From Haliotis rubra (lineage: Eukaryota), in assembly GCF_003918875.1 (NCBI RefSeq), contig NW_025767546.1, positions 930,001-994,000 on the forward strand: a stretch of 64,000 nucleotides of DNA, read 5' to 3'. This document shows positions 16,691 through 38,100 of the stretch, piece by piece; position 1 is the stretch's first letter, and each line of letters starts with the position of its first letter. The notes below the pieces were generated by a model. That model was not told where the DNA came from. It searched no databases and was given only the letters and a program-made list of their open reading frames with translations. Made by a program: the position numbers and the translations under genes.

Positions 16691-17433
16691 ATCGGCAATA
16701 CTGTTGGTGAGCTCATATGCCTATGTTTTGTACCAAATCATCACCACTTTGAAGAAATCCATCTGAACCTAGCAGATGCTTACTTTCTCTTTGTCCTGTT
16801 TGTCTAAAGGAGTGATCATTTTTTGTTTTGAGAAATAAACCATGTTATCTTATACATGTAGACGTTTGTCAGTGTTTAATGAAGGACATGTGTGATCATG
16901 TATAGATCTTACTCTCCAGGCTTAGTGATTCATGGTTTCAAAGAAATTAGCAGAGTTCTAAGTGTACAAACACCAACAGATAATACAGCCTTGGCCAGGC
17001 ACACCAGTGGATGACGGCACAAGTATCGGTCAAGTCATGATGTCATACTGAACAAGGACACAAAACCACCAGATCTCCACTACCCCATTAGTGCCCTGCA
17101 GCCACACCGACCAATGGTTGATAGTGTGACAACCATTAAATATCACCACTACAGTGACACACAACAATTTAATCTCCTCTATTGCTAACCAAGGTCCCCA
17201 CAAGGGGAGCACCTAAACATGTACATCCTTAAGAAGGTGAACTGCAGCAAGCACCTGTCTACAACCCTGATGACTTGGATTTGCCTGGTAACATGACAAA
17301 GGACTCAACTCGTAACGCTGTCTTGACTATTACATTTATTCACATTTGAACTGTTGAATCTGAGCAGTACTGAGAACAAACCCATCCATGATTGTTTTGA
17401 TGCAGAATTAAGTTGTTTAAACTTGGCCCTTCA

Positions 17434-20077
17434 TCACTCTGTTTGTAGTTTATCATGTCGTTGCAGTCTAAGCTGTGAGTCCAGTTTAATTAGCTGTTGT
17501 TGGAAACCTGTATTCGGGCACACCTCTCGATGGCTCCTGACCAATCGGAGAGCATCTTTGACTGTCATGTGACGTTTGAGCATCAGGAATGCCACAGCTA
17601 AAGTGGCAGATCGACTTACTCCCTGTATACAGTGGACCAGAACTTTTCCTGCAAGTCAATTGTATGTCTTTGAACAAAATTCTGATGATAGCCTGAACTT
17701 CATTCTTACATATATTTCATGAGTAACAGTAATTTGACCCAATTTAGGTAAGGTGACCTCCATTATAAAGGGGAATTCAGTACAAGGGATGTACAGGACA
17801 CATGCAGACACAATGTCTCCCTTACAACGGATGTGTCCATAACCAGATTTGCAGGCAAACATTATCCGCAAGGTGTACAGGGCCATCCATTGTGAAAAAA
17901 ATTATGAAATCAAAAGAGAGCAAAATCTTTTGTTGATATTAGGGACCGTTCATAATTTATGGCTAGGGGGGTGATGGTGATATTAAGGGAGGGCCATCAA
18001 TTATGTTCTGGGGAGAGGTGGGTGGTGGTGGTGGTGGGGTTAATAAATTTTCTACACATTTACTAGGGGGGTCATTGATTTTGTACATGACATGCCCACC
18101 TGCACTTACTTTGTACATACATTTTAGGGGGGTCATTCACATTGTACATGCTTCTCCATAAAACTCATCATCACTTTCCCCCTAGCCATAAATTATGAAC
18201 AGTCCCTTAATATATTGTTAAAATGTCTGCTAGGTATTTAAAAGAAGCACAACATTTCCCAACTACATGTCATCAACTCATCACATCACTTGTCTGTTGT
18301 AATAGACTCATGGCTCAAGAGGATAAAATTATGGCGGATATATGAGATGGGAAAAGAGTTAAAGGAATTTTACCAAAGAGAATGATATATGATCACACAG
18401 GCAAATGGACAGATACTGAACAAAAGCTTGGAGGTCGGTGTGGTCAGTAATTTAGGACAAAGATGAGAAACAAAAACTTGAGATGCAACCTGTTAACAAT
18501 GGATCCAGGGCTATAGGCAAACCAGTGGGCGATAGCATGAGTAAAGGAAGCAATCAGTGACAAACTTCCATTCCTCTGCAGTCACCTGTCACAAGTCCTT
18601 CAGAACTGCTAGACACCAAACTTACTGTGTTATTGTAGAATGGTACGGTGTACTTCATGCACTTCTCCATGGGGTGCACAACTTACCCCCATTGTCCAAT
18701 GCTTTCTCAATGAAGTCAGCTGACTCTTGGAAGAAAGGGTAAAGGTTAAAACTCATGTGATCAATGGCTTCAATGCCCTTGAAAGTGACCTTGAGCTTCC
18801 TATACATGTCCTCATTGGTGTTTACATGATGGATATCGACACCGTGGGCAGCATTGAGGATGTGAGTGACCCAAGCCGTCGGAGCTGCATCAGATCACGA
18901 GCAATCGACCTTCAACAAAGGGTAAATGTTCATTCACATGGAGGTCAATAAGACTTGGTTTAATGTTGGTTTAAGTGACACATAAAGTGTCCTGCTAGCT
19001 ATACTGGTATGGTAATATCCTATCTGAACATTTGATCTATTCTTGACTGTGACTCTTGTTGAGATGGCTGACTTTACCCATCAAAACATCATATGATAAA
19101 AAAAATTGCAACAATGGATCCTGTAAGTAAAATTGTGATTAAAAATATTTCTTTTAATATTTCATTTTTGCAAATAGTGAACCTCACTGTTTAAGATGGA
19201 TATGTAAATCTGACCTTTGACAAAACAATTTTACAGGACACTGTGGAAGAAATCCATTTGGACATCCTCTGATTCTAGTAATTTCTGGAATGTATACGTG
19301 GTATACAACCACTAAGGACACATTGGAGACTCGAAATTAACTGACCCGGTACAGCAGTTAATGCCACAAGAGTGGCCTGAATATCTTTGTTAAATATATT
19401 AAGAATTTCAAACAAATGATTGAAATTGAAAAAGAAGTAGATGATTTTGGTGACTATAACACATTTTGGAGAGGTTTTTTTGTAAGTAGGCATTTCACCT
19501 GTCGGCCAATCCATTTTCAAGAAAATAAAATACTGCATAAATTATTAAACAGCAATAAGAGTTACACATATGGTTTCATATTGTATCCATGTGGGGAATC
19601 AAACACGGGTCTTCAATGTGATGAGCGAACACTTTAACCATTAGTCTACCCCACCGCCTCCAACATACCACAAAAGTGAAATAGAAGTATCACAGAACAC
19701 AAGTATTTTTTATACAATGTATATATTTACATGATATATTGCTTTCCTCTGGACAAGAGCCAAGTGACATGGCAGCAAAATGTAGGTTTCCCAACCAAAT
19801 CAATGAACATTTCAGTCTTCATACATTTTTCACAAAACTATGGCATTCTTGAAATGACGAACATTGAGAGGCTACTTCAATGTTTCAGTTGTATTTGAAT
19901 AAAAGAATGTCTTGAAGAGTGTACTTACTCATCCCCAACAAGGAGATTGTCATACACCTCGTCATACGCTGTGTTGGGCAGCATGGTCATTCCACCAGCA
20001 GGTTGAGTGATGATGTCATCAAGCTCCTCCAGACCGCACTCAGCAGCATCTTCACTCTCTGGTGTGGCAGAGGCCAT
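17434..20077 (-). CDS. Atypical dual-specificity phosphatase (DUSP3/VHR-DUSP13/26-like)
   Basis: Exons 20077-19929, 18909-18687 and 17648-17434. Motifs DEVYDNLLVGD, THILNAAHG, FFQESADFIEKAL, catalytic VLVHCIQGVSRSATL and VCPNTGFQQQL. One base is apparently missing in the C-run at 18870-18872. Confidence 0.88.
17942..18206. mobile_element. PIF/Harbinger-like MITE
   Basis: TIR GGGACCGTTCATAATTTATGGCTAGGGG...CCCCTAGCCATAAATTATGAACAGTCCC with a TTA TSD. A second copy is at 55098-55324. Confidence 0.8.
19575..19660 (-). mobile_element. tRNA-headed SINE fragment (family B)
   Basis: The reverse complement gives GGCGGTGGGGTAGACTAATGGTTAAAGTGTTCGCTC...GTTTGATTCCCCAC (A/B-box-like). Relatives lie at ~36540-36660, ~37120-37205, 60642-61842 and ~62575-62657. 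Confidence 0.65.
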
Positions 20078-20327
20078 GTCTGCCTGCAGGCAGAGAACAG
20101 GTAACACAGATAAGGAAACTGGTGTGTGTGTGTGTGAGTGCGTGCGTGAGAGTGGGTGGAAGGGTGAGTGAATTGGGGTGAGACAGTGGGTGAGTGAGTA
20201 ACACGCATTGTTTTTCTATATTCTGGCAGTATCATGCCTGGTCAAGTTATTTATAAGAGGTTATACTTATTTATTGGATCATGGTATCAAGTTATTATAT
20301 CAACCATTATGTGGTAAACTTAGTTTT

Positions 20328-21015
20328 CATGATGGTCTCTGTATATAGAGCCTCCACCATGTACAACATCCCTTCATATAGCCTGACAGTCTATGACTGA
20401 GTAGACGTCTGCTACAACAGTTACGTGGTGATGGCCTCTGTATATAGAGCCTCCACCATGTACAACATCCCTTCATGCAGCCTGACAGTCTATAACTGAG
20501 TAGACGTCTGCTACAACAGTTACTTGGTGATGGTCTCTGTATATAGAGCCTCCACCATGTACAACATCCCTTCATATAGCCTGACAGTCTATGACTGAGT
20601 AGACGTCTGCTACAACAGTTACGTGGTGATGGCCTCTGTATATAGAGCCTCCACCATGTACAACATCCCTTCATATAGCCTGACAGTCTATGGCTAAGTA
20701 GACGTCTGCTACAACAGTTACGTGGTGATGGTCTCTGTAGATAGAGCCTCCACCATGTACAACATCCCTTCATTTAGCCTGACAGTCTATGACTGAGTAG
20801 ACGTCTGCTACAACAGTTATGTGGTGATGGCCTCTGTATATAGAGCCTCCACCATGTACAACATCCCTTCATGCAGCCTGACAGTCTATGGCTGAGTAGA
20901 CGTCTTCTGCAACAGTTACATGGTGATGGCCTCTGTATATAGAGCCTCCACTAAGTGCAACATCCCTTCATGCAGCCTGACAGTCTATGGCTGAGTAGAC
21001 GTCTGCTACAACAGG
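20328..21015. repeat. 99-bp tandem repeat (~7 copies)
   Basis: Unit begins GATGG(T/C)CTCTGTATATAGAGCCTCCACCATGTACAACATCC. The period is 99 bp (20331, 20430, ...). Confidence 0.95.
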
Positions 21016-21729
21016 TACAAGACTCCTCTCTGTACAATGTCATTCTAATTCAAAATGAGCGTGCTGACGTCATCACGAACACAAACAAACACAGTATTCT
21101 GTGAATATTCCATGTGGATACTGTGATGAGAATAGACACTGATCTGTTGACCATGATAGAGAGATTGTTAGATAAATACACCATAATAATCTTTAATGTT
21201 AAAAGTAGAACCATCTGCAAAACACAACACAGATATTTCCAAAATCACTTTATAACAGGAGAAGCAACTTCAAACAAAGATAATTTACCAAACTGCTGAT
21301 TGTAGATTTCATACATTTTTTCCAGACCAAAAGCAAACAAATATATATTCATAACACAATAACATAATATACAGAGATAACAAACAAGAAAAGTAACATT
21401 TGGTTGGGAACATAAAACCCACTGCAGTAGTTATTCAAACAGAATCATATACTTCTTTGATGGGCATTTTAGAAGTTGAGTTGATGAAGAATAATTGTCA
21501 TTATTCTTCAGAATAATATACATGACAAAATCACACATCACAGCCATGACCTTGCATCTGATGTAAATCTTCACCAGACAAGCTGCTGACAGATTGTATG
21601 AAGCACTCAGTTGTCATGCTAATCTAGTTAGCGGTCCTGTGATGACAACACTTGGCATATCCAACACACTGATACAAAAACAAATGTACGATAAATATGG
21701 GTTATATATAAGTGTTCAACAAAATAATA

Positions 21730-22888: not shown

Positions 22889-25800
22889 TCACAACTCCAC
22901 ACAACGCTGAGCAGCTTCCATCATGAACCGTTCCCGCCGAAGAATATTCTGGATCCTGTTTTCCTCATCACTGCTCTTACACAGGATAACAAAGTGGCTG
23001 TCTTTCTTCCTGGCCCGACCCCTCATCTGTACCAGGGTGGTGACTGTATTTGGTGGGTTCATGCAGATGACCAGCTCACATTCAGGGATATCCACGCCTT
23101 CCTCTGCTACAGATGTGGCTACAATGATGTGATACTTTTTGCTCTTCACTCCATCAAGCACACGTTTCTGATGTTTCACCTTCATCCCACCATCAGTTGG
23201 ACCAGACCCATGGCCAACCACTGATGTGATCTTCAGACTGTTTGCTGATGCAAATGTTGTCTGCTTCAGGAAGTTGCTCAGTCTGTGTGCATGTGCTCTC
23301 TCCCGGACAAGAATCAAGGCCATTGCATTTCTCCCAGTTTTCCAGTTGATATATTCATCATTGGTGAGAGTACTGAGTAACTGTGTGTAAAGTGAGATGT
23401 GAAGTGGGTTGTCATCAAACTCCTGCTGAACATGAGCTGAGTGAGCAGCTCTTTTCATAGCATCTTGCAGCTCTTTACACTCAATACCGATCCCCTGAGC
23501 ATGATGGAAGCCACTTCGTGCCTGATTCTGGTTGAGAGTCTGCAGGTCAGCTACAGCTGTTGGTATCCCAGAACCATCCAAATCAGACAATGCAATCAAA
23601 ACTACCGAGGAATGATTGACAACAAACTCCATATTCATTTTGACTTGTGGCTCCTCTGAATTTGCTTGGCAGTTCCCAAGAGCTTGGACAAACTTTCCAG
23701 TAGCAACATTGTCCAGGTGCTCTACATACTCAGCCAAGTCTCTCTGCATCCTCTGCACTCCCCACTGACAGACATCATCAATATTGCACAACTCTGACAG
23801 CTTCAAGTAACACTGGCAAATGTACATCAAAAGTGTCTTCCGGAAAGCTTTTTCTTCATCAGAAAATGGCTCATAGTTGATCTTCAGTTTGGCATGGGAT
23901 TGATAGCGTTTGAGTTCTCTCACACAATCTCCTTGGACGATGGCAATGCTGGCTCCGCCTAGATTGTGGAATAACTCCTGCAGCATGCTGACTGTGTTCT
24001 CAACACTATCCCGCCCCGCAGGAGAGGCAGTCAGACCGAGCACTTTGGGTCTGAGTTCAGGCGGGCATGGACGGTGATACCCCTCTAGGAGACGATTGAA
24101 GGGGTGATTCTTGACACAGTGATGAGCTTCATCAAACACAACCAGCGAAAAGTGTTCCCAGCGGAGCTGCTGCTTCTGCAGTAGATTGTCAGCATAGGCT
24201 ACAATGCAAATAAATCACAGTTAGGTTACAACACAGATATGTCACAGTTAGGCTACAACACAGATATGTCACAGTTAGGCTACAACACAGATATGTCACA
24301 GTTAGGCTACAACACAGATATGTCACAGGCTACAACACAGATATGTCACAGTTAGGCTACAACACAGATATGTCACAGGCTACAACACAGATATGTCACA
24401 GTTAGGCTACAATACAGATATATCACAGGCTGCAATGCAGATATGTCACAGTTAGGCTACTACACAGATATGTCACAGTTAGGCTACAACACAGATATGT
24501 CACAGTTAGGCTACAACACAGATATGTCACAGTTAGGCTACAACACAGATATGTCACAGTTAGGCTACAACACAGATATGTCACAGGCTACAATGCAGAT
24601 ATGTCACAGTTAGGCTACAACACAGATATGTCACAGGCTACAACACAGATATGTCACAGACTACAACACAGATATGTCACAGGCTACAACACAGATATGT
24701 CATAGTTAGGCTACAACACAGATATGTCACAGTTAGGCTACAACACATATATGTCACATTTAGGCTACAACACAGATATGTCACATTTAGGCTACAACAC
24801 AGATATGTCACAGTTAGGCTACAACACAGATATGTCATAGTTAGGCTACAACACAGATATGTCACAGTTAGGCTACAACACACAGCTACAACACAGATAT
24901 GTCACAGGCTACAACACAGATATGTCACAGGCTACAACACAGATATGTCACAGTTAGGCTACAACACAGATATGTCACAGTTAGGCTACAACACAGATAT
25001 GTCACAGGCTACAACACTGATATGTCACAGTTAGGCTACAACACAGATATGTCACAGGCTACAACACTGATATGTCACAGGCTACAACACAGATATGTCA
25101 CAGGCTACAACACAGATATGTCACAGGTCACAGAACTACAACACAGATATGTCAGAGGCTACAACACTGATATGTCACAGTTAGGCTACAATATAGATAT
25201 ATCACAGGCTACAATGCAGATATGTCACAGTTAGGCTATAACACAGATATGCCACAGTTAGGCTATAACACAGATATGTCACAGTTAGGCTATAACACAG
25301 ATATAATACTGTCATGCTAGAACATAGACATTTTTCAGAGTTAAGCTACAACAATGACATAGTTAGTTATATCACAATTAGCATAGGTTGATATGTATGA
25401 AGGAATAGGATTTTTTTAATAAACAAAAAGTAGATTCCTAAACTTCAGGAATGACCAGTGGGTTGTATTTCCTTCCACTACTACTATACTATTTGGTATT
25501 TTGCAACTGGGAAACAGTTTATTTTGGAAAAATTGATTTCTAACACTCCACACATTAAAGATTTATAACTAAAGTACTGTCGGAAATGCTAGAAAAATGC
25601 TTTTTAGCCTTAATATCTTTAGAAAGGTGATAAATGTACTATGTTGTCAATATATCAACTCACCTATAGTGTACCTAATTTTTATTTCAATTGATTTAAC
25701 ATTCCCATGCATTTAAAGGGCAGTTTACTGGAGAGAATTTGGTACCAAAACAACAACTCAAGATATTTTCAGAGTTCAACAACAGAAATCTGAAATAGTC

Positions 25801-28800
25801 TTTACATTTATGCTAATAATACAGGTGGTGTAAAAATATGGATTAACAAATAAATGTTGAATGTTGGTGTTACTTTACTTAATTATCGTTTCTTTATTGA
25901 AGAAATGTTAATATAAAGCATAACCGGGACGTAAAACCATCCTTGACAACTTTGACAAGGGAGTACTTAGACGGGCGGTCTACAAACTTTATGAGAAGAA
26001 GAATATATATATTCTAAAGAAGCTACACCAGTGACTTCGTTAAATCTTTGGCCAATGTTCACAACTAGATTAAACTGACCGAATTACATCCATATTTTTG
26101 CAATGAAATATACTGTTGACATGCAAAACATTTATTAAAACATTGCACATTTCTACAATCAATCGATAAGATAACACAAGTGATAGGATTCTTTCCAATG
26201 TACAGTAATTCGTATGTTTATTTCAAAACAAACACACATACACAAATGATCCCTTACATAACCAATACTTATACTATAATGCATTACATATTCAACATTT
26301 TGAACAAAACATCTATTGAGATGACCCCTCGCCCGAGCGTGTGCTCAGCTGTCAATTTCACCTGTCGATACCGTGCATGCTGATGATGTAACACAGGCAG
26401 TTAATGTTTGTATCAAATAACGTCCCACTACCCCTTATTTTTCTAAGTTTTTGATATTTTCATCAGTAAAAACACATTTTAGGGCATGTCTCAAAATTTA
26501 TTCCCTCGGTCTACATTAGGTAGATGTTTCTTAAAGTGATATTTGTTATTTAAGTAACTGTAATATCTCTGAATTTTAAATATAAGTCAAAAAGCATTTT
26601 TCTTGCATTTCCGTAAGTACTTTAAGTGTCTCCACTTCTGCAAGTACCTGCTGTGCTGACGATGATGTCATGCTTGTAGAGAGGTGTGTTGTCTGTAGGC
26701 AGTATGTTCCCACACAGCGTGGCTATCTTCAGCTGGCGTTCCTGCACCTCTCCATCAACTGTCAGGCTGGAAGTAACATAGTATTCTACAATGAATTATG
26801 GACATACTCCATTCTGATTGGTCAGTCAGAGGTTTCAAATGACAACAACCGCCTCTGATTGACATAACTGATGTGCTGACCACTAGTAGAAAAGTACATC
26901 ATTTCTCAGTGATTGTCAGGGGGGCAGTTCTAAACCACTATATGGACAACTGTAGATAACATACATGGTATATGGCAATACATTTTGTGAAGAGAACATG
27001 GCAGAGATCAATTAAGAGTTTGTAGTTCAAGTTTGAGGGACATCAGACTGTGAGAGCTTTGGACCTTTTCTCAAGCTATCATTCTTTCTGTATCACGATG
27101 AGAGGTGTGACTTTATAATGGTGATACGCAGCAGAGAAACAACCTTGCATCGCTTGATTACTGTTCTCTATGGTTGCTCACTTCATGACGGCTTACAAAG
27201 TAGGTGTGCTACACACTTTCTATGTCTTCTATTTACGGATGTGTTTTGTAAAATGATACAATATGTGTAAAATAATCATGTTTAGGCACATAAAGCACCA
27301 TTATTTGTTTAAAGGCTTTTATAATTATCCAAGTTTCCTCAAAAATCAAATTCATTCTGTAGATACTTTTAACGTAATTTTAATGAATATTTAAAGTTTT
27401 AATAACATTTTCTGATCTAATTTTATGTCGAGAAGAACAAGACTGTATTTTTAAGCAGCCATAGTTACTAGCAAACTAACAGGCATCAATAATTATGTAT
27501 TTAGTTTAGTATTCTGTAATATTGATTACTGCCTTCTTTTGCAACATCATTTTCTGTAGATTTTAAAGTTCAAATACAGACAATGAGCAGCTGAGATAAC
27601 AGGGCCTAAAGATGTTTCACAGAGCTGTGGCTTTGGACTAGTGGTACATAACAAACACTGATATATGCTAACAAAGTCTCTGGCATTGAATTGCTGGTAG
27701 ACTACCACAGTTTGGGTTTATTTAACGTTTCAGGGTACTTTCTGACCCTTATCATGACTTTAGCACTTATAGGCATATATCACCTCTGTTTCTGTTTCTG
27801 GGGAAGTAATCAGTAACAGATGTGCTTACATGGCAATTCTCATGATCATATGACCATGGACAAGCTAAAGGACAAACTGGCTACTGTAAACACTCATGTC
27901 AAATAAATGGTGATGGAACTGAATTGAACTATATTTACACTCAGGTCGTGATCAGCAGTTACAACAGTTACATACATCCTAAACTTCAGGTCTACAATAT
28001 GTATCAACAACTTGACCAAGCAGTGAGTACACATACTAATGTACAACATTCCACTGAGAAACATGGTATTCAAGGTAGACAGTAACATAAAACATTTACA
28101 CATCGTAGCTAAATTTTACTATTAGAAAGTAAATTCATATTAGGCCAGACCAATTTTATTTCTTGTTTTACGAATCTGCCTGTCGTAATTTTTCAAAAAT
28201 AAGAAAAAAAAATTAAAAATGAATTTTGCCTGCTCAAAAAATATAATTCAAATGTTTTTATTGATCAAAAATGTAAACTCACATAAAAAAAATTGTTTTG
28301 TTTTTTGGCCCATATGCACTTCATAAATTGCCAAAAGTAAAATATTTCTGGTACTTCAAAGGAATATTACTTTGACTGGTGATTTTTTTCATTTTTTTAA
28401 AATTTCCTCCTGCCTTTATGTTTTCTGACGACAAAAATCCGTAAAAGAAGAAATAAAAAATGGTCTTGCCTTAAAGACAAATTTATTGTCAAGTGTATCA
28501 TGGTGCCAGTTCAATAAGTATGCAAAGTCAACATTCCCCAACTATCATGTGGTTACTGACACAACAGCCAAGTGCAGACAGGTTGCGGCCTCTCTAGCTG
28601 AACCTCCTTGTGTCTACTACATAATGGAGGCCATTTTGTATGGGTAGTGTGTCTTGTCTCACACCACAGTGATAGGTAAACCAGCAATCTTGCAGACCTG
28701 AAAGTTGACAGTAAATACTGAGGCTGTAATGAAAAACTGGCTTATCTGAAGCGGAGCTAAGTGTCAGGACACAGGTGACTTTTGTGACAATACACAGTCA

Positions 28801-31800
28801 TGGACAGAAAACTACCTACCGCTTGTACATCCGATCCCCAAGCTCATTGAAGATGTACTTTGACTGCTGCAGCACCAACAACACCTTGTCCACCAGGAAC
28901 AAGACTGGGCGCAGAGGGTTCTGATTCAGCATACAACTTAGCGTCATCACCGACACCAGCGTCTTCCCAGTACCTGCAGCAGCAGCAAACATGTCACATT
29001 GCTGCATCACATCCATCAGTATCCAGTCACACAGATCTGAGTTACCATAAATATCCTGGACCAAGTTGCCACCAACCTTTAGTTTGAAGCTATTTCACTA
29101 GGCATTACACTAAAAATGACACAGTTATCACCAAACTGAAACAAGTTGCAATATCACCAATACAATCAAATCACGATGAGCCGAATCACTGGGGACCAAG
29201 TAATATATTCGACTTATCGATGTATTCGAGACATAGGTATGTCTATGAGGGTAGAAAAAAAAGATGATCCAGTCCTAATTCCTCCGCCTAAGCATTTGTT
29301 TATCTAATGATTTTACCCAATCCACAAATAAATCAGACGTCATCCAGGCTGACTTGTTGTGACAGTATGAAGTCAGCAGAGATTTGACGTTCTTAAAACA
29401 ACGTGGCTTAGCAGATTTCCCTATCACTAATAGGGGCACCTTATCAGTTCCAGTCTGATTAGCACAGACATTGATTTCCGTAAAATCACTAATCTGCCTT
29501 TTGAACTCACCCGTCAATGGTGGAAAGGTGTGAGCCGCGCTGGTTTGTTAATTGGATCAGTTAGCTACACCAATTAACTTCTCATTGACTGACTTCGGCT
29601 TATGTATACAAGATTGCTGTTGTTTGAATCTCATGGGACCAAATTTCCTTCTCGAGTCATCGTGTGTATTTATGAGACGACTTCATGTAACCGGAAATAA
29701 AATGATGACAGCTATAACAGGGAATGGTCGGGACCGACCGGTACTTCGAGTTATGCATAATATTCGAGACACCGGCATTCGACTCATCAGGATTTGACTG
29801 TACTTGAATTGCCCAATACACTTGGAAAATTTCTCCCCTATGTCTGTTAATGTTCAGATAAACATCTTTCTAAGCCAGAATTCTCTTTTGATAAGTAAAC
29901 TAATTTTATCTCAAATATAGTGAGAGCTCATTAAAACAAATTGACCATGTTGAATGAAAGAAAATCACTGCTAGTATATGGGAAAGTTACAAATACTGTA
30001 CTATTAAAGATAAAGGGATATAGATGGCATAGTCCCTCACTTAAGAATCTATGGTGGATATCAAGCTGCACGGTTGTGTATGTCGTAGCTTTAACTCTAC
30101 AGAAATGAGTACAATTTTTCTGACAAGAAACTGGATAACTGAAATTGAACATGCTTTTTCAGAACTAACAAAGAAAGAAAAGAGTTGATTGAGAAACACG
30201 TAGACTCACCTGTTGGCAAGAAGATGACCCTGTCACTGTCCATAGTTTTGCAAAACAGATCCACCTGGTAGCTTCGAGGTATGGTCTTAGTCAATTGATA
30301 GGCCTCTGCCTCCGCATCGTCTATACCGAGTACCCGCTTTATCTGTCCCAGGTTGAGCTGGGGAGCAGTCACCTCTGCTGCCCTCTGCCTATGAGCTCTA
30401 CTCTCTAGGTGAGCTTGGTAGTCTTTTTCTGTGTTCATCGGCCGATTACATGTGTCACAGTAATATTTGAAATAGCCACTGAAAGGGTTCTTCGGTGGCA
30501 CCTTTGGTATTGCACCTATACCAAGATGGCCACTCAGCAGTTCAAAATTAGAGGATGGAAAGATACTTGACTCTGCATCTGTTTGTAGAGACATGTTTCT
30601 TTCTTGTTTAGGAGCAGCTGAATGATTGTGATCAGTCGTAGTGGAGCCCACAGAAGCATGTGGTCCATCATTGAGAACACTGCTAGCATGTGAGTTGTAA
30701 CTGATGAAACTTTCAGCCTCACCACCAGGAATGTCAACATCTAATGTCTTGCTTCGATCAGATTCATCTTCTTCTGAATCCAGGTTCTCAAATGCCTCCA
30801 GGGTAACTTTATTTCCCCTGTGTCGAACAGTGGTCTGGTTTTTTAGAGGGTTGTAGGTATTGGTCCGCCTACTTCCAACTGATCCCTTGACGTTATCTTG
30901 GAAGTCATCAGTGTCTCCAGCAGCAGTATGTTTTGGCTGAGTGATCGCTGCTGTTTTCATCCTCAAAGGCATCACATCTGTTGTGGTAATGGCAGGGTTG
31001 ACAAGTGGGGAACCTCTGCCCATGCCAAGTTTAGCCAATGTAGTGCTTTTGGAAACAACATATGTTGAAGGAATTATTTCTGTGTTACTTCTGTAATCCT
31101 TGGAAACCTCTTCCTTTGCTGCAGCAGACATTCCTGGACTTTGTTCTCGTCCCATGCTAAGCATATTGCTGGCACTGTTTGTAGTTGATGACATCCTCAC
31201 CCTGTGTCAGTTCCACTCTTTCTGCCGGACTGTAAACCATCAGATTCAAGATGGTCCCTGTTTCCTAAAGTATCTGAACACATATTTGATGCTGGAGTGA
31301 TAGGAACAGGCTTGAAACTTGAAGTGGCTGTTTCCTTCACTTCAGTATTTGGAGTTACGCATTTGACTTTAGTGACTTCTCCTGTACGAAGAGCTTCCCA
31401 TACATCCTTGTAACCACCATGCTTGGGTTCTGTCATGTCCCTTGGACTATCTTCAACCTTACAATCTTGGCTACTGTTGTCAGTATTAGCAGATTCAGCC
31501 ACATCGACATAACGCTGCATCTTTTCCACAGTCTTAAGATGCTTGGGACTTTTCTTATGGATTGACAACTGTTCGAAAGAGTTCAGTTGGCACTGGCATA
31601 CCTCACACACATACATGTTTAGTGGGGACAGGCCTGCCAAGTTCTGATTGCCTGGTGAATCTCGCCCCAGAACTTCTGTCCTGACCTGGTCCAAGGAACT
31701 GCTGGCCAACCCTGCCTTGTTTTTATGTTTGGCAGAAGCATAATGCTGCGCAGCACTTTCTTGTCCACTGAATGACTTGAGACACACCTTACACTCTAGT

Positions 31801-34136
31801 GCCAACATTCCATTCTGGTTGACCATCTTCCTCTTTTCCTCAGCCCTTGCGTGATTCCGACCCTGAAGGTGCTGGGAAGCATGCTGTGAAGATGTGAGTT
31901 CTATGTTACAAACAAAGCATCGCCCCCTTCCACCTGTAAACACATATGCTGGCTCCACCTCCCCATCTCCAGGCTGGGCTGATGCTCCAGAATGTGCATC
32001 AACTGCATCAACCAAGTTCAATCTCTGTACAGCCTTTTCATGTGGTTTCCCTGCCAAGTGTTGACTGGCATGTGCCTGAGAGGTAAGTTCTATCTTGCAT
32101 ACATTACAGAAGCCTCTCATTCCATTGAACTCATATATCCTCTGTTCTGCTGACTCTTTTGATTCCTCCTTGATGTTTGACACTTGCCATCGTCCTAAAG
32201 CTTTAGTGTGGTTCTTGCCACTGAGATGCTGCCGTGCATGCTGGGAGGATGTTAGCTCAATGCTGCAGACATTACACCATCCTCTGTTCCCATCAAACCG
32301 ATATGGCTGACTAGGACAGGTGGACAGTTTGGCACCAGCTGTTCTCTCACTGACATCTGGGCCATTGTTGACAAAAACATTACCAGTATCTGCTGAATGT
32401 AATCCTTTTGCTTTTGCATGCTTCTTACCACTGAGGTGTTGGTTCGCATGTTCACGAGATGTTAATTCAATTTGGCAGATGTTACATCGTCCAGTGCTTC
32501 CATGAAAAGTATATTCCTGTTCTTCTGTTCTGTCTTCTTGAATTAAAGGAGTTCTTTGCATTTGTGCATTCTGTGAGACACTTGAGGAATACTGACTGTC
32601 ATTAGTGTTGAGGACATGCTGGCTGGGAATGTTAAGGTTGTGTAGATGTGTATAGCTACCGAGAATTGGAACATCTGACAAAGTTCCTCCATGAACGGAT
32701 AAGCACAGATTATGTTCAGTTTGATAACCTGCAGTCTGCGGCAAATTGCTTGTTGGTCCAGCTGAATCTGTGAGTTTGTTTGCATTTGGAAGCATAATTT
32801 GTGCTAAACTTTGAGCTTTTTGAAACTGACTCCCTTTCGGTTCTGACAGGATATTCATTGGCAGGGAAGTCTGAGTGGTAACACCTGGAGTTGCAGGGGG
32901 GCTATTTACCAAGGTCATTTTCTGGGAAAGCTGTGGTTTCTCCTGCTCTTGAAGAGTGAAATTCGTTGTGGGCAGCTGTGACCTCTTCTTGTGTCGATCA
33001 CTCTCAAAGTGCTGATGGGCACTCTCAGGGCCAGAGAATACAACATTACACAAGTCACATTTCAGCACCTCAGTGGAAGGTTGTCCTGATTTCCATAGGT
33101 TCTCTGCTTTCTTATGTCGCGATCCATCAAGATGTTGCTGGGCATTTTGTGGAGATGTAAAATCCACATTACAGACATTGCAGTAACCCTGCTTTCCATC
33201 AAAAGTATAAGGGACTTTGTCTCCATTAAGCTGGTCATTACCATCACCAGTAGTATTGTTCTTTGTATCAGATACAGAAATGTTTCCAACTGGAGTAGAA
33301 CTAGGTGTCAATAATGGTGGCATGTTTTGACGTGGTCTAGTTTCAGGCATGGAACTACTGTTCCTGTAGACTGGAACATCAGCAAACAGTCCAGTAACTT
33401 GGTCTGAAGAGGGCACGTCTAATCTTGTAGTGCCACTATTAGGCTGTGACATGTTTGTCAAGCCATACTGGGGAGAACTATTGTTGGAGACATTTCCCTG
33501 TCCCTCTAATTCTCTCTTCTTCTTTAAGTGCTTGGCACTTGCAAGATGTTCCTGAGCATTGCCAATACTAGAAAATGGTACATTGCAAATCTGACACTTC
33601 AATACATCGCTGGTATCCTCTCCCGCTTCCATCTGTTTCAGTTTCTTCTGATGTTTGGATCCACTGAGATGTTGCCGAGCATGTTGTAGAGATGTCAAGT
33701 CAATGTCACAGAGATGGCAGTAGCCTTTAGAACCATTAAAGTCATATTCCTTTCTCCCTGTTTCATTGGACAGGTTGAAAGGCAATGTCTGGTTGAGCCC
33801 TTGTGGGAGATCGTTACCTGCTTGTTGTATGTTCCCAGGAAGGAGAGGGCTTTGAACTGCTGTTGCAGCTTGGTATGTGAAACCTAAACTTCTCCTTACA
33901 GTCTCAACGTGTCTTGGGCTGACAATGTGTTGTTGAAACTGTTCAGCTGCATTACACTGGACACTGCATGGGTCACACCAGTATGTCCTTGTGTTTCCAT
34001 TAAACACAGAATTTTTAATCTGGTCTTCCTTTCTCAAGTGAGCTTCACTGATAAAATGTTGTTGAGCTGGTAAAGCACCAGTAAATTGCTTCTTACAGAT
34101 GTCACAGTAAAGTGGAACACGCTGTTGGCTGTTCAT
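22889..34136 (-). CDS. Multi-zinc-finger (13x matrin/JAZ-type C2H2) RIG-I/Dicer-family DExD/H helicase, ~1836 aa
   Basis: Exons 34136-30210 (one G apparently missing at 31200-31202), 28973-28820, 26766-26648 and 24198-22889; intron phases 1, 2 and 1 are all consistent. Thirteen C-x2-C-x12-H-x5-H fingers. Helicase motifs: Q (PRSYQ), I (LPTGTGKT, across a splice junction), Ia (FLVDKVLLVLQQ), Ib (IIVSTA), II (FDEAHH), III (GLTASP), V (ATSVAEEGVDIPEC) and VI (QMRGRAR). A minus-strand AATAAA lies at ~22513. Confidence 0.85.
24215..25305. repeat. 27/23-bp minisatellite abutting the acceptor of the last helicase exon
   Basis: Units ACAGTTAGGCTACAACACAGATATGTC (27 bp) and ACAGGCTACAACACAGATATGTC (23 bp). 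Confidence 0.95.
25573..26621. mobile_element. Non-autonomous DNA transposon (Kolobok/piggyBac-like target)
   Basis: TIR AGTACTGTCGGAAATGCTAGAAAAATGCTTTTT vs AAAAAGCATTTTTCTTGCATTTCCGTAAGTACT, flanked by CTAA/TTAA. Confidence 0.65.
28140..28473. mobile_element. AT-rich MITE
   Basis: TAGGCCAGACCAATTTTATTTCTTGTTTTACG is mirrored by CGTAAAAGAAGAAATAAAAAATGGTCTTGCCTTA. Confidence 0.65.
29163..29800 (-). mobile_element. Internally deleted pogo/Tigger (Tc1-mariner superfamily) transposon
   Basis: TA-flanked TIRs CAATCAAATCACGATGAGCCGAAT / ATTCGACTCATCAGGATTTGACTG. DDE fragment CANQTGTDKVPLLVIGKSAKPRCFKNV...NKSAWMTSDLF at 29275-29470. Confidence 0.88.
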
Positions 34137-34524: not shown

Positions 34525-35117
34525 CCGTGTCAGGCCCACCCATACGAACTCTCCATGGGTTAAAGTCTTATAAATCTTTGATGTTACTTCGTCATGACAT
34601 AAGGACCAACATGCACGGCATAAGCATTATTTATATCATTATACTGTATAATTTATTGCATAAAACGTATGACTATTTTAGCTGTTGCGGAGTGCCTCGA
34701 TACTGTCTGCAAAGGCCCGCGAAGGACGAATCTGACTTAGTGTATTTAGCTGTGTACACTTCGAACGATGAAACACAGTCGATTAAAATTATTAGGTGCA
34801 TTTGTCATGACTGTAGGTTATCTACAAGATACTTCTTTAGTATCACACTATGTTTGATTCCAAAAACGTTTAAAAATACTTACACAAATGGTTACCTCCC
34901 TTGAAAAATACTGACATTAGAGCTATATTTTCGAATAATCGGACTGTTTCTAACACGAGAACAGTTTGTAAAGTTATGGATGAAAAGATCCGAGTTTTCA
35001 TTATAATAACTTTTTACGAGTGTCACTAGATTGTTTGTTTCATAAAAAGGTCAAACAATTTACAGTTTTCGATAACTTTGTATGAATGCGAAAAGATTTC
35101 AAAATAGCTTTACCTCT

Positions 35118-35131
35118 GTTATTTTAGCAAC
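35118..35131 (+). promoter_or_regulatory. RFX X-box-like motif
   Basis: GTTATTTTAGCAAC ends 7 bp before the LRRC72 ATG. X-boxes are typical of ciliary genes. Confidence 0.45.
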
Positions 35132-35138
35132 CAAAAAC

Positions 35139-38100
35139 ATGGCCGACAGTGAGAAGGTGAGAGTTGTGCATAACGTGTTAAATACCGATATTTAGCTGGA
35201 AACAATTACATTTTGACATTTCACTTATGGGCGATTTATTGCAAGTTTTTTGTATCATACCCAAATATGTCAGCAATAAGTGAGTCTATTATTATCATCC
35301 ATAAATAATAAATACTAAAATAGATAGAAACGAATGAAATAGTTATGAAACAAAATCACACCTAAGTGGGTTTTGTAAAGAGTCAAATGTGCCAGCATAT
35401 TTTACCTGGCTTATACAAATGTGTGCGTTTCTTCTGTCCTACTGTAGTTATCAAATATGTCAGCAATAAGTGAGTCTATTATTATCATCCATAAATAATA
35501 AATACTAAAATAGATAGAAACGAATGAAATAGTTATGAAACAAAGTCACACCTAAGTGGGTTTTGTAAAGAGTCAAATGTGCCAGCATATTTTACCTGGC
35601 TTATACAAATGTGTGCGTTTCATCTGTCCTACTGTAGTTATCCTACTAGTCTAGATAATTGAAACAATGTGATCTCATTATCCCTGCATTCAATAAATGT
35701 TTGTTTATTGATTGTTGCAAAATATATGTTGCCAACTAGATAATATACATTTTTCAAAATTTTTGCAGGTTTTGAAACAGCTCTTAAGCAATAGAAGAAT
35801 AAGGAAAGATAAAGATGTAGAAGAGCTTTACCTTTCTGACAAGTGAGATTATGTTTGTTTGTTTGTTTGTTTTACAAAATGGTACATGCACAAAGCATGT
35901 ATTTTCTCGCGGACCCCAGTTTTTTTCATTGTTTGGTATAAAGACATAAAGAGGCTCGAAAACTCTAAGACACAATACACATCTTTGCTTGACAAGTATA
36001 CTGCTGACACCATGGTCTAGCTGCACCCTTTAGGAGTTTTATGCAGGACTGATATTGATAAATAACAACAGCAAAATATATCATTAAAAATGTGATGTAA
36101 TTGATTTTGTTTTTTATTAATGTATATGAAAGTAATGTTGATCTGAAATATTATATATTTTGTTGTTGTAAATCTCTGTTAAGTCATCCTTAAGCCAGTG
36201 CAATTGGCTAAAGAAACTGATGTACATGTATATAACAAAATAGATAGGGATTATTTCTCATATTTAGTCCAGATATGTACTGTTTATGCAGTAACCATGT
36301 TAACTGGAAATGTGTTTCATAAAGATACTGTCCATGGAAATGTGTTTCATAAATATGGTGTACATGGAAATGTTTCATAAAGGAGATTCTGAGATAAAAC
36401 TTTTTATGATGTTTGTTTCAGAAGTCTAACAGAAGTATGTGATCTGCAGCGTTTTCATTATTTAAGATGTTTATGGCTCAATGGTAATAAGGTAAGCCCT
36501 TGACCACCATGACAGATATGTTCTGTAAAGACTGCGAGTTTTGGATTGCCTAGTGGTTAAAGTGTTCACTTGTCACACAAAAAATGCAGATTTAATTCTT
36601 CTCTTGGGTACTATGTGTGAAGCCTATTTCTGGTGTGCCCCTCTATGATACTACAGCAATAGGAACAGGGTGGTGTGATGTGGTAGCCCAGTGATGAAAA
36701 GTGGTGTAAATACATACACCATCTCTCCCTCATTCTGGGTTAGAAGTCCCCAGCATAACTATGCGTGTTATCAACCGGGATGAGAATTTTCCACAGGTAT
36801 GTGGAATTCCACAGATTTGATCGTGCTGGGGTCATTCTTGTATATCGTCCCCCAAGATCCCCGGAGCATTGTCCTCGTTTTTCACTCATACCCATTCTCA
36901 TCCCTGTTGTAAAAGTACTCAGACTTGATGACATGGTTCATTTCCTGTCTTTATTCCCCGAAAGTGTCAGACCTAGATTTGAATGTTGTCATACAGTGTG
37001 TCAAAGCTTAAATCATGTAAATGGCAATGGATTTGCTGGCATATCTAGTCTACAAGTATTCAGGTTTCATAGTAAAAAAAAAAATCCCCATTTTTAGTAT
37101 TTATTTTTAGAAATGGGCCTCTCAAATTGTACCTATGTGGAGAATTAAATCCGGGTCTTCGACATGACGATCGAACGCTTTAACCACTAGGCTACCCCAC
37201 CGCTCAATGCCTGTATGAAACAGTACAATCAAGTATCAGAGACTTGAAGTAAAGTCATCATTTTCAAGTCTTGATGGAAATTTAAAGGTAAAGTGATTAT
37301 AGTCTAATGACAAGCTGCTTACTTCTTACGTAAATGTAAATGGCACATTGTGTGGAATTGTTTCTAAAATTGTAAGGTTTCATATCTTGTAGAAAACACA
37401 TTTAACGGTAATTTAGATACTTGTCCACAGAAATGCTGAGAGTGATTTCCTTATTTAACTCCAGTCTACATGAAGTGTATATTTGTATGCATGGTACATA
37501 AGATTTTGATAGATGAATTAAATAATGTTTCAATGTTTTTATTTATATGTACATATATTACGTCACCAATCATTTTCTGAAGATTCCTTTGACAGCTACG
37601 GCAACTCAATTGTCTGAGTGAGAACTACCAGCTGTCCGAGCTATACCTTCACAACAATGAGCTGGTTGATATCACCGGGGCTCTCCGCCACTTGACATGT
37701 CTGCAGGTCCTCATGCTGCATAACAACCAGCTCACAAAGCTTGATCGGATCCTCACTGAGATTAACAAGATGCAGAGCTTGAAGACACTTAGTGAGTGCT
37801 AAAGTTATAAGGGCAGTTATCATCTGTGTCACAGTACAGTAACATTCCAATACTGTACTCCCAGCAGTTTAAACAATAGTGCTGCATGAGTCTCATTTAT
37901 AGTCCATTTGACTTCATTTTAGACCGATGAATTGCTCACTAGCACAAACTCTAATAACTGCAATAAAACCAACTTTTGCACAGTCACATGAAATCGACAG
38001 GCCAACTCTGATGATTTGTCTCATAATTTTGGACACCAGAATATAAAGGTTGGTTAACAAACAATCATTATTTTGTTGTCACTTTTCACTATTTCTTACG

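What the first reader, a model, noticed from the sequence alone, without database searches (positions are those of the whole stretch)
22889..34136. Candidate new dsRNA sensor/effector: 13 dsRNA-type zinc fingers fused to a RIG-I/Dicer-family helicase
Seen: four exons splice in phase into one ~1836-aa frame once one G is restored at ~31201. It has 13 C-x2-C-x12-H-x5-H fingers, the last immediately before the Q motif, then a complete SF2 helicase (LPTGTGKT, DEAHH, GLTASP, ATSVAEEGVDIPEC, QMRGRAR). The fusion of finger 13 to the helicase does not depend on the frameshift correction. Known: this finger spacing defines the matrin/U1-like JAZ/ZNF346, ZNF385, ZMAT3 and ZFR fingers, several of which bind dsRNA. 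The helicase signatures are those of RIG-I/MDA5/LGP2/Dicer. I do not know of a characterised protein with this architecture; ZNFX1 has an SF1 helicase with NF-X1 fingers. Inference: an invertebrate antiviral or RNAi factor in which a long flexible finger array captures or measures long dsRNA for an ATP-driven translocase.
Basis: partly seen in the sequence, partly recalled or inferred. Interest (0 to 1): 0.92.

Follow-up and report, generated by a model that had tools for sequence, protein, structure and literature searches.

The report
Zinc-finger array fused to Dicer-like helicase
An abalone gene joins 13 zinc fingers of the double-stranded-RNA-binding type to a Dicer/RIG-I-type helicase; the gene is real, is conserved from sponges and corals to molluscs and acorn worms, and I found no study of what it does.

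Summary
On the minus strand, four coding exons (34136-30210, 28973-28820, 26766-26648, 24198-22889) give 979 + X + 857 residues. There are 13 C-x2-C-x12-H-x5-H fingers (Pfam zf-met 3e-60, zf-C2H2_jaz 9e-36) and a complete SF2 helicase. The protein ends 39 residues after motif VI.

The window lacks one base at about 31200 relative to two other Haliotis species. Nothing else is broken, and dN/dS downstream of the break is 0.26. I therefore read it as an assembly slip or a very recent allele.

The architecture is a conserved family: molluscs, a nemertean, hemichordates, corals (some with an added Z-alpha domain) and a sponge. In most members counted (37 of 41; all 3 named species), the last finger sits 73-88 residues before motif I. 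All named members are "uncharacterized" or auto-named.

The predicted helicase fold (pLDDT 87) matches RIG-I/MDA5/LGP2/Dicer/DRH-1 over its whole length (Z 27-30). In trees the family is its own clade (support 100), outside both RLRs and Dicers. It sits loosely with Dictyostelium HelF (dsRBD plus helicase, an RNAi suppressor) and with RdRP-fused helicases.

A role in dsRNA handling, RNAi or antiviral defence is plausible but untested. I found no paper describing the family. I rate it a new variant of a known kind, with moderately high interest.

The parts
31201..34136 (-). Coding exon 1, part upstream of the frame break: start codon at 34136 and fingers 1-12. Finger positions are 34038-34106, 33909-33977, 33651-33719, 33528-33596, 33114-33182, 32991-33059, 32418-32486, 32208-32276, 32040-32108, 31851-31919, 31725-31793 and 31539-31607. 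The fingers are separated by long low-complexity linkers.
   Evidence: ORF list; regex scan; Pfam zf-met 3.4e-60 and zf-C2H2_jaz 9e-36; tblastn of the H. asinina orthologue, residues 1-981.
31197..31202 (-). Frame break. Codon GGG (31202-31200) is followed by TGA (31199-31197), and the downstream frame begins at 31200. The window is one base short here relative to H. asinina and H. cracherodii.
   Evidence: Sequence; translations; three-species DNA alignment.
30210..31200 (-). Coding exon 1, part downstream of the frame break: disordered linker, finger 13 (30391-30459), Q motif PRSYQ (30265-30279) and the first half of motif I (LPTG). The donator site is G|GTGAGT at 30210/30209.
   Evidence: the orthologue exon is continuous over residues 1-1314.
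29275..29517 (-). Fragment of a pogo/Tigger-type DDE transposase inside intron 1. It is not part of the gene product.
   Evidence: Pfam DDE_1 E=1.8e-14.
28820..28973 (-). Coding exon 2: the rest of motif I (TGKT) and motif Ia (FLVDKV).
   Evidence: Sequence with AG|GT boundaries; Pfam ResIII; tblastn 94% identity to H. asinina.
26648..26766 (-). Coding exon 3: motifs Ib/Ic (LKIATLCGN ... DIIVSTA).
24195..25304 (.). 27-bp minisatellite (about 43 copies) filling the 3' end of intron 3. A similar repeat is present at the same place in H. cracherodii.
   Evidence: TRF; blastn against L001.
22889..24198 (-). Coding exon 4: DEAHH (24119-24133), GLTASP (24020-24037), a helical insertion of about 170 aa (Hel2i-like), Hel2 with ATSVAEEGVDIPEC (23078-23119) and QMRGRAR (23009-23029), one long C-terminal helix, then the stop codon at 22889-22891.
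   Evidence: AF2 model of the orthologue; fold matches.

Best explanation
This is the abalone member of an old, unstudied animal protein family. An array of JAZ/ZFa-type C2H2 fingers, 13 here, is fused to a helicase of the duplex-RNA-activated (RIG-I/Dicer) type. The helicase has no C-terminal RNA-end-recognition domain, no signalling domain and no nuclease.

Shown:
- The gene structure, the fingers and intact ATPase motifs.
- A predicted Hel1-Hel2i-Hel2 fold plus one pincer-like helix.
- Purifying selection on the coding sequence.
- Conservation of the design from sponge to hemichordate.
- A terminal finger held at a near-fixed distance from motif I.

Inferred:
- The terminal finger and helicase form one RNA-clamping unit, with the finger taking the place that the CTD or dsRBD has in relatives.
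- The remaining fingers, on long flexible linkers, raise avidity for long A-form duplexes.
- ATP hydrolysis drives translocation or remodelling along dsRNA.
- The protein acts as a non-catalytic partner in a small-RNA or antiviral dsRNA pathway, as HelF, DRH-1/3 and LGP2 do, rather than signalling or cutting itself.

The one-base frame break in this window is most likely an assembly slip or a very recent allele.
For: Architecture and motifs.

Orthologues: they have the same four exons and an uninterrupted frame.

Selection: dN/dS against H. asinina is 0.30 overall, 0.26 downstream of the break and 0.21 over finger 13 plus helicase. There is no other lesion in 1836 codons.

Family range and design. 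Finger number is 2 in corals, 3-5 in sponge and hemichordates, and 5-13 in gastropods and bivalves (2 in the one cephalopod). The spacing from the last finger to motif I is 73-88 aa in most members: 37 of the 41 counted (the others 110-142) and the 3 named species. The tail after motif VI is 39-60 aa where the motif was found, except in two proteins.

Structure: AF2 models have pLDDT 87 and pTM 0.80-0.81. The terminal finger and its linker are also at pLDDT 86-96, which suggests a docked finger. Full-length fold matches to RIG-I, MDA5, LGP2, ancestral Dicer helicase and DRH-1 give Foldseek E about 1e-26 and VIA Z 27-30.

Sequence: the best solved relative is the ancestral Dicer helicase at 5.6e-35, then RIG-I at 1e-28.

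Tree: the zinc-finger helicases form one clade (SH-aLRT 100). They join HelF (65-82) and RdRP-fused helicases (89-99), outside the RLR clade (100) and the Dicers (one clade of 13 at 100).

Context for RNA: relatives carry dsRBDs (HelF-like), an RdRP or Z-alpha (P0184 and P0054, 45.9 and 38.6 bits). helF knock-out cells are hypersensitive to RNAi (PMC2175303); HelF is Q86L44, 837 aa, dsRBD plus helicase (PMC4894637). Molluscs lack Dicer-2 and siAGO, and their Dicer-1 DECH box has diverged (PMC11114477).

Transcript-like evidence in a relative: a 5953-bp contig holds a single ORF encoding fingers plus helicase of the Argopecten protein.
Against: - There is no biochemical or expression evidence for any family member.
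- Binding of dsRNA by these particular fingers is assumed from Pfam family membership. The best solved sequence match, ZFa 1zu1, is weak (E=0.006).
- The deep position of the helicase is not robust. An AU test does not reject a zinc-finger plus RLR grouping (p=0.0995), and no FANCM/Hef outgroup could be obtained.
- FANCM's translocase domain also matches the model well (Z 27.0), and archaeal Hef scores 2e-27 by sequence.
- zf-met fingers also occur in spliceosomal and nuclear proteins, and HelF is reported as nuclear (per the title of Popova et al. 2006, cited in PMC2175303; that paper was not held and not read).
- In this very window the frame is broken, so this copy may not make the full protein.
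Confidence: 0.55

Rival explanations
1. It is a pattern-recognition receptor in the RLR sense. The fingers replace the CTD for ligand recognition, and binding triggers a transcriptional antiviral response through a partner adaptor.
For: The whole helicase superposes best on RIG-I/MDA5/LGP2 (Z 28-30; Foldseek). The AU test cannot reject a sister relationship with RLRs. Coral members carry Z-alpha, a domain otherwise known in ADAR1, ZBP1 and PKZ (PMC11298590). dN/dS of about 0.3 is fairly high.
Against: No CARD, Death or other signalling domain is found in any member scanned. There is no RD/CTD and no RIG-I_C Pfam match. The ML tree puts the family outside the RLR clade. Abalone have separate canonical RLRs (P0255, P0256).
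Confidence: 0.15
2. It is a nuclear translocase for RNA:DNA hybrids or branched DNA (FANCM/Hef-like, or an R-loop remodeller), with fingers that bind A-form hybrids rather than viral dsRNA.
For: The FANCM translocase domain matches the model at Z 27.0 over 501 residues. Hef 1wp9 scores 2e-27. Atlas feature neighbours are mostly archaeal Hef-like helicases, though scores are 0.88 or lower and count only as leads. ZFa-type fingers are known to bind RNA-DNA hybrids as well as dsRNA (established knowledge of dsRBP-ZFa).
Against: None of the 34 proteins scanned with Pfam, out of the 150 best representatives, carried FANCM/Mph1 hallmarks. Those scanned were zinc-finger helicases, dsRBD helicases, RdRP helicases, Dicers or RLRs. 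FANCM scores 5.6e-16 by sequence, and only over Hel2, against 5.6e-35 for Dicer. No ERCC4, HhH or MHF-binding domains are present. The fusion partners in relatives are all RNA-directed.
Confidence: 0.1
3. In this genome the gene is genuinely broken, either as a fresh pseudogene or split into a 979-aa finger protein and a separate product. The full fusion protein would then not be made in this animal.
For: A stop codon lies at 31199-31197. The window is one base short of both orthologues at a site that is not a homopolymer in them. An ATG lies 3 nt after the stop in the downstream frame.
Against: The 857 codons downstream have no stop or indel and show dN/dS 0.26 and helicase dN/dS 0.21, so any inactivation must be very recent. 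The missing base abuts a GGG run, a typical place for a long-read miscall. Both sister species have the intact frame.
Confidence: 0.25
4. The frame is restored by a 44-nt micro-intron. The deletion created a strong donor (AGG|GTGAGG at 31201/31200), and the CTTAG|C acceptor at 31157/31156 would rejoin the frame while dropping 15 residues of linker.
For: The donor and acceptor are present and the arithmetic restores the frame (and my reading). The acceptor motif is conserved in all three species.
Against: The 15 skipped codons are conserved as coding sequence in both orthologues (VRMSSTTNSASNMLS against VRMSSTTTSATNRLS). 44 nt is below the usual minimum intron size in animals, and there is no polypyrimidine tract.
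Confidence: 0.04

Closest known systems
Dictyostelium HelF (Q86L44, DDB_G0294407)
   Same: A stand-alone Dicer-like helicase with an N-terminal dsRNA-binding module and no nuclease or signalling domain. Its helicase is the nearest characterised neighbour in the ML trees. It is involved in RNAi: the knock-out is hypersensitive to RNAi (PMC2175303).
   Different: HelF uses a classical dsRBD, not zinc fingers. It is about 837 aa and amoebozoan. The sister relationship is only weakly supported (SH-aLRT 65-82).
Dicer helicase domain (Dicer-2, ancestral AncD1D2) and RdRP-fused helicases (Dictyostelium Rrp proteins, sponge and plant RdRP-helicases)
   Same: The best sequence match among solved structures is AncD1D2 at 5.6e-35. 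It shares the Hel1-Hel2i-Hel2 fold. RdRP-fused helicases group with the family in the tree (89-99).
   Different: There is no PAZ, Dicer-dimer, RNase III or RdRP domain. The family lies outside the Dicer clade.
RIG-I-like receptors, especially CARD-less LGP2, and C. elegans DRH-1/DRH-3
   Same: These give the best structural superposition (Z 27-30 over about 500 residues). They share the DExH ATPase motifs and the helical insertion. LGP2 and the DRH proteins also act without a signalling domain of their own.
   Different: The family has no C-terminal RD/CTD, no RIG-I_C Pfam match and no CARD or Death domain. It is outside the RLR clade (support 100). The protein ends 39 aa after motif VI.
dsRBP-ZFa (Xenopus), JAZ/ZNF346, ZFR, ZNF385 and ZMAT3/Wig-1 zinc-finger dsRNA-binding proteins
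   Same: The same C-x2-C-x12-H-x5-H finger with long linkers, strong Pfam zf-C2H2_jaz and zf-met matches, and ZFa as the top solved sequence hit.
   Different: Those proteins have 3-7 fingers and no enzymatic domain. Here up to 13 fingers are fused to a helicase.
ZNFX1
   Same: A zinc-finger plus helicase protein implicated in dsRNA and antiviral or small-RNA biology.
   Different: ZNFX1 has an SF1 (Upf1-like) helicase and NF-X1-type fingers, so the two are unrelated in both modules (established knowledge; not tested here).

Membership tests
RIG-I-like / duplex-RNA-activated ATPase (DRA) helicase superfamily (RLR, Dicer, DRH; broader SF2 'RIG-I-like' family with FANCM/Hef) | SF2 motifs Q, I, Ia, II (DExH), III, V and VI intact | tested here: met
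   PRSYQ, LPTGTGKT, FLVDKV, DEAHH, GLTASP, ATSVAEEGVDIPEC and QMRGRAR are present. Pfam finds ResIII and Helicase_C. The motifs are nearly invariant across 48 family members.
RIG-I-like / duplex-RNA-activated ATPase (DRA) helicase superfamily (RLR, Dicer, DRH; broader SF2 'RIG-I-like' family with FANCM/Hef) | Alpha-helical insertion domain (Hel2i) between the two RecA lobes | tested here: met
   The AF2 model of the orthologue has pLDDT 87, with helices spanning residues 249-415. About 500 of its 572 residues, spanning model residues 19-572, align to RIG-I 240-771, MDA5, LGP2 and DRH-1.
RIG-I-like / duplex-RNA-activated ATPase (DRA) helicase superfamily (RLR, Dicer, DRH; broader SF2 'RIG-I-like' family with FANCM/Hef) | Pincer (V-shaped helical pair) after Hel2 | tested here: inconclusive
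   A single long helix (model residues 546-571) follows Hel2 and then the protein ends. Only the first pincer arm can be present.
RIG-I-like / duplex-RNA-activated ATPase (DRA) helicase superfamily (RLR, Dicer, DRH; broader SF2 'RIG-I-like' family with FANCM/Hef) | ATPase activity stimulated by duplex RNA | not testable with these tools
   This needs a biochemical assay.
RLR proper (RIG-I/MDA5/LGP2) | C-terminal regulatory/RNA-end-binding domain (Pfam RIG-I_C-RD) and RIG-I_C | tested here: not met
   No such Pfam match at E<=0.01. The tail after motif VI is 39 aa.
RLR proper (RIG-I/MDA5/LGP2) | Membership of the RLR clade in a helicase tree | tested here: not met
   The RLR clade (SH-aLRT 100) excludes it. 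A sister position to RLRs is not rejected by the AU test (p=0.0995).
Dicer | RNase III domains, PAZ and Dicer dimerisation domain | tested here: not met
   Absent from the window protein and from all family members scanned.
JAZ/ZFa-type dsRNA-binding zinc-finger proteins | C-x2-C-x12-H-x5-H fingers matching zf-C2H2_jaz/zf-met, separated by long linkers | tested here: met
   13 fingers are present. Scores are zf-met 199 bits and zf-C2H2_jaz 122 bits, against cut-offs of 21 and 23. Linkers between successive fingers are 18-168 aa (359 aa before finger 13, across the frame break).
JAZ/ZFa-type dsRNA-binding zinc-finger proteins | Binding of A-form dsRNA | not testable with these tools
   Inferred from family membership only.
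HelF-like dsRBD-helicases | N-terminal or C-terminal dsRBD (Pfam dsrm) plus Dicer-like helicase | tested here: not met
   No dsrm match. Zinc fingers take its place. Helicase kinship is supported only weakly (65-82).
FANCM/Mph1/Hef | Closest sequence kinship to FANCM/Hef helicases, with ERCC4/HhH or MHF-binding modules | tested here: not met
   No such domains are present. FANCM scores 5.6e-16 against 5.6e-35 for Dicer. None was found among the 34 of the top 150 representatives that were scanned with Pfam. The fold match of Z 27.0 is only slightly below that of the RLRs, and no outgroup-rooted tree was possible.

The most novel reading that the evidence does not exclude
The zinc-finger helicases are a fourth, pan-metazoan lineage of duplex-RNA-activated helicases. 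A docked JAZ-type finger replaces the CTD or dsRBD, and an expandable finger array (plus Z-alpha in corals) measures or coats long dsRNA. In molluscs, which lack Dicer-2 and siAGO and have a divergent Dicer-1 DECH box, this protein would supply in trans the processive, ATP-driven dsRNA handling needed for antiviral or transposon-directed small-RNA production.
Probability: 0.2. Interest if true: 0.85.

Novelty: new variant of a known kind. Interest (0 to 1): 0.66.

Why it matters
Animal dsRNA defence is currently described with two helicase lineages, Dicer and the RLR/DRH group. This family would add a third, with a different RNA-recognition solution: zinc fingers, and Z-alpha in corals.

It is present in sponges, cnidarians, lophotrochozoans and hemichordates. 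No vertebrate or ecdysozoan member appeared among the named hits of the searches made here, which were not exhaustive.

How molluscs deal with long dsRNA is an open question. They include farmed abalone and oysters that suffer herpesvirus mortalities, and they lack Dicer-2 and siAGO. This gene is a concrete candidate that can be tested directly.

The conserved unit of one finger plus helicase is also an attractive target for structural work on how SF2 helicases acquire duplex specificity.

Tried and rejected
2. A 44-nt micro-intron as the cure for the frameshift is rejected as unlikely, because the skipped codons are conserved as coding sequence in both orthologues.
3. I looked for further 3' exons that might encode a CTD. 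The next minus-strand gene downstream is a DUSP phosphatase, and the orthologues end at the same residue.
4. I tried to obtain a FANCM/Hef outgroup. A scan of genome contigs with the family alignment found nothing, and none was found among the 34 of the top 150 representatives that were scanned with Pfam. The trees therefore stay unrooted.
5. The AU test of a zinc-finger plus RLR grouping gave p=0.0995, so deep placement is not settled.
6. The protein atlas feature search gave only generic archaeal and eukaryotic helicase clusters at 0.88 or lower, which is uninformative.
7. Literature searches by domain names, accession numbers, Z-alpha plus helicase and Hel2i plus zinc fingers returned no description of the family. 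The abalone immunity survey PMC11103948 and the lophotrochozoan RNAi survey PMC11114477 do not mention it; the latter required an RNase III domain for inclusion.
8. The original HelF paper (PMC1360742) is not held. HelF facts are taken from PMC2175303 and PMC4894637.

Full report
**What is in the window**

The minus strand between 34136 and 22889 holds one gene. Its largest ORF (34136..31197, 979 aa) contains exactly twelve C-x2-C-x12-H-x5-H fingers. The next ORF (31200..30097) contains a thirteenth finger (30391-30459), followed by PRSYQ (Q motif) and LPTG. Pfam scores the first ORF at zf-met E=3.4e-60 (11 separate stretches) and zf-C2H2_jaz E=9e-36. Finger 13 matches both families. The later pieces match ResIII and Helicase_C, and nothing else of note appears.

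Reading the splice sites base by base gives GT-AG introns and exons 34136-30210, 28973-28820, 26766-26648 and 24198-22889. Joined, they give 979 codons, the frame break, then 857 codons with no stop until RCVEL*. Motif I is split by intron 1 (LPTG|TGKT). DEAHH, GLTASP, ATSVAEEGVDIPEC and QMRGRAR are all present. The protein ends 39 residues after motif VI. The next minus-strand gene downstream is a dual-specificity phosphatase, so no C-terminal exon is hidden there.

**The frame break**

Frame 1 ends GGG TGA at 31202-31197, and frame 2 opens at 31200. The H. asinina orthologue (P0001, XP_067654681.1, 1841 aa) and the H. cracherodii orthologue (P0157, 1843 aa) read straight through this point. 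A DNA alignment shows the window exactly one base short of both.

A 44-nt micro-intron (31200-31157) would also restore the frame. It would remove 15 codons that are conserved as coding sequence in both orthologues, so I consider it unlikely.

dN/dS against H. asinina is 0.30 overall (dS 0.21), 0.26 downstream of the break and 0.21 over finger 13 plus helicase. There is no other stop or indel. A long-standing pseudogene would not look like this. The break is an assembly or read error next to a GGG run, or a very recent or heterozygous allele. I cannot tell which.

**The family**

An exhaustive HMMER search with the last exon found 60 representatives at E<=1e-30. The full-length ones have the same design, as Pfam scans confirm.

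Named sources:

- Gastropods: Haliotis, Gigantopelta, Lottia, Babylonia, Nucella, Batillaria, Aplysia, Plakobranchus, Elysia, Physella, Biomphalaria, Bulinus, Candidula, Bradybaena.
- Bivalves: Mytilus, Saccostrea, Pinctada, Argopecten, Ylistrum, Sinanodonta, Potamilus, Dreissena, Mercenaria, Ruditapes, Mactra, Mya, Solemya.
- A cephalopod: Argonauta.
- A nemertean: Lineus.
- Two hemichordates: Ptychodera, Glandiceps.
- A coral: Oculina.
- A calcareous sponge: Sycon.

All are 'uncharacterized' or 'hypothetical', or carry automatic names such as 'dicer-like protein 1', 'RIG-I-like' or 'ERCC4-related helicase'.

Finger number varies: 2 in corals and in the cephalopod Argonauta, 3-5 in sponge and hemichordates, and 5-13 in gastropods and bivalves. 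Two features are nearly constant. The first cysteine of the last finger lies 73-88 residues before motif I in most members: 37 of the 41 counted (the others are 110-142) and the three named species. The protein usually stops 39-60 residues after motif VI; two proteins have much longer tails.

Coral-like members P0184 and P0054 add a Z-alpha domain upstream of the fingers (45.9 and 38.6 bits, against a cut-off of 21).

A 5953-bp Logan contig carries one uninterrupted ORF that encodes the whole Argopecten protein, fingers and helicase together. This is what a spliced mRNA would look like, although I could not verify the library type.

**What kind of helicase**

Against solved structures by sequence:

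| Match | E-value |
|---|---|
| Ancestral Dicer helicase AncD1D2 | 5.6e-35 |
| RIG-I | about 1e-28 |
| Plant DCL1 | about 1e-28 |
| Archaeal Hef | 2e-27 |
| MDA5/LGP2 | about 1e-27 |
| DRH-1 | 4e-17 |
| FANCM (Hel2 only) | 5.6e-16 |

An AlphaFold model of the orthologue's helicase, built from 48 sequences, has pLDDT 87 and pTM 0.81. It shows two RecA lobes, a helical insertion at residues 249-415 and one long C-terminal helix. Foldseek's top 50 hits are all MDA5, RIG-I, LGP2, ancestral Dicer helicase or DRH-1, aligned over about 580 columns. VIA-align gives RIG-I Z 29.8, MDA5 29.5, LGP2 28.3 and DRH-1 27.4. It also gives the FANCM translocase domain Z 27.0. The fold therefore places the protein in the broad RIG-I-like SF2 family but does not by itself exclude a FANCM-like enzyme.

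A second model that includes the last finger keeps pLDDT 86-96 through the finger and its linker, with pTM 0.80. This suggests the finger is docked on the helicase rather than floating. I could not inspect coordinates, so the docking site is unknown.

**Phylogeny**

I built trees of 79 and 83 helicase cores with IQ-TREE (LG+C20+F+G4 PMSF, SH-aLRT support). Two long branches were dropped in the second run. References were labelled by Pfam or by source name.

- All zinc-finger helicases form one clade (100), and the RLRs form one clade (100). 13 of the 14 Dicers form one clade (100) in the first tree; the Dicer label is split in both trees.
- The zinc-finger clade joins the dictyostelid dsRBD-helicases (HelF family) at 65-82.
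- It then joins the RdRP-fused helicases at 89-99.
- An AU test does not reject forcing the zinc-finger helicases together with RLRs (delta lnL 22.7, p=0.0995).

No FANCM/Hef sequence could be fetched as an outgroup. None was found among the 34 of the 150 best representatives that I scanned with Pfam.

The safe statement is this: the family is a distinct lineage of the Dicer/RLR helicase superfamily. It is not an RLR and not a Dicer, and its nearest relatives are probably HelF and the RdRP-associated helicases.

**Function**

Nothing is known experimentally for any member. Literature searches by domains, accession numbers and architectures found nothing. The abalone immune-gene survey PMC11103948 does not describe it. 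The lophotrochozoan RNAi survey PMC11114477 required an RNase III domain and so could not have seen it.

The context points to RNA:

- The fingers belong to the JAZ/ZFa class. ZFa 1zu1 is the top, though weak, solved hit.
- The helicase's relatives are fused to dsRBDs, RdRPs, RNase III or Z-alpha.
- HelF (Q86L44, 837 aa, dsRBD plus helicase; PMC4894637) modulates RNAi in Dictyostelium: the knock-out is hypersensitive (PMC2175303, citing Popova et al. 2006).
- PMC11114477 reports that molluscs lack Dicer-2 and siAGO and have a divergent Dicer-1 DECH box. That would leave room for a trans-acting dsRNA helicase.

My best reading (confidence about 0.55) is an ATP-driven dsRNA-binding translocase or remodeller. 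The docked last finger would substitute for the CTD or dsRBD of its relatives, and the extra fingers would add avidity for long duplexes. It would act as a non-catalytic partner in a small-RNA or antiviral pathway.

Rivals are an RLR-style sensor with an unknown adaptor (0.15) and a nuclear hybrid/DNA translocase (0.10). Independently of function, the gene may be genuinely broken in this genome (0.25).

**Verdict**

The novelty is that of a new variant of a known kind, an undescribed and anciently conserved architecture within the Dicer/RLR helicase superfamily. Its sequences are already public but unnamed. Interest is 0.66.

Noticed in passing
window 6557-9660: A 29-bp minisatellite of about 106 copies (92% matches) with strong GC skew. 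It explains the composition anomaly at 6-10 kb.
   Followed up: partly
window 14545-16691: A 39-bp minisatellite of about 55 copies in two blocks. It produces many spurious repeat ORFs on the plus strand.
   Followed up: partly
window 20330-21018: A 99-bp tandem repeat of 7 copies (94% matches), lying between the helicase gene's 3' end and the DUSP gene.
   Followed up: no
window 24195-25304; L001 10860-12030: A 27-bp minisatellite fills the 3' part of intron 3 of the helicase gene. A similar array lies at the same intronic position in H. cracherodii, so the repeat is old.
   Followed up: partly
window 29275-29517 (-): A fragment of a pogo/Tigger DDE_1 transposase inside intron 1 (Pfam 1.8e-14).
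   Followed up: partly
window 17434-20107 (-): Exons of a dual-specificity phosphatase (Pfam DSPc match, 29.6 bits, below the family's gathering cut-off of 33.5, on 17434-17595). This is the next gene downstream on the same strand.
   Followed up: partly
window 12655-13122 (+): An ORF matching the TMEM101 family (Pfam 4.9e-25).
   Followed up: partly
window 49768-51090 (+): A single 440-aa ORF matching GPI mannosyltransferase PIG-V (Pfam Mannosyl_trans2, 1.7e-81).
   Followed up: partly
window 44906-45610: A GC-rich tandem repeat of about 104-112 bp (about 6 copies) that yields a repetitive minus-strand ORF (44984-45478). Its nature is unknown.
   Followed up: no
window 62058-62438 (-): The ORF contains [16 protein letters not shown]...[21 protein letters not shown], which I recall as polo-box-like (a PLK1 C-terminal exon?). 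There was no Pfam hit at E<=0.01, so this is unconfirmed.
   Followed up: partly
L001 1-1984 and L002 1-1982: In both other Haliotis species an LRR_9-family gene (266 aa) lies head-to-head upstream of the zinc-finger helicase gene. Upstream non-coding sequence (window about 34900-35300) aligns to both loci, so synteny probably extends into the window.
   Followed up: no
L004 198-3296 (P0184), Logan SRR12053378: A coral-like transcript encodes Z-alpha plus 2 JAZ-type fingers plus the same helicase. I did not find this Z-alpha architecture described in the Z-alpha survey PMC11298590.
   Followed up: partly
P0149 (1908 aa), from the representative search: A protein carrying two Death domains and two complete RLR units (helicase plus RIG-I_C plus RD) in one chain. 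This is either a tandem RLR fusion or a merged gene model; its closest named relatives are scallop RLRs.
   Followed up: no
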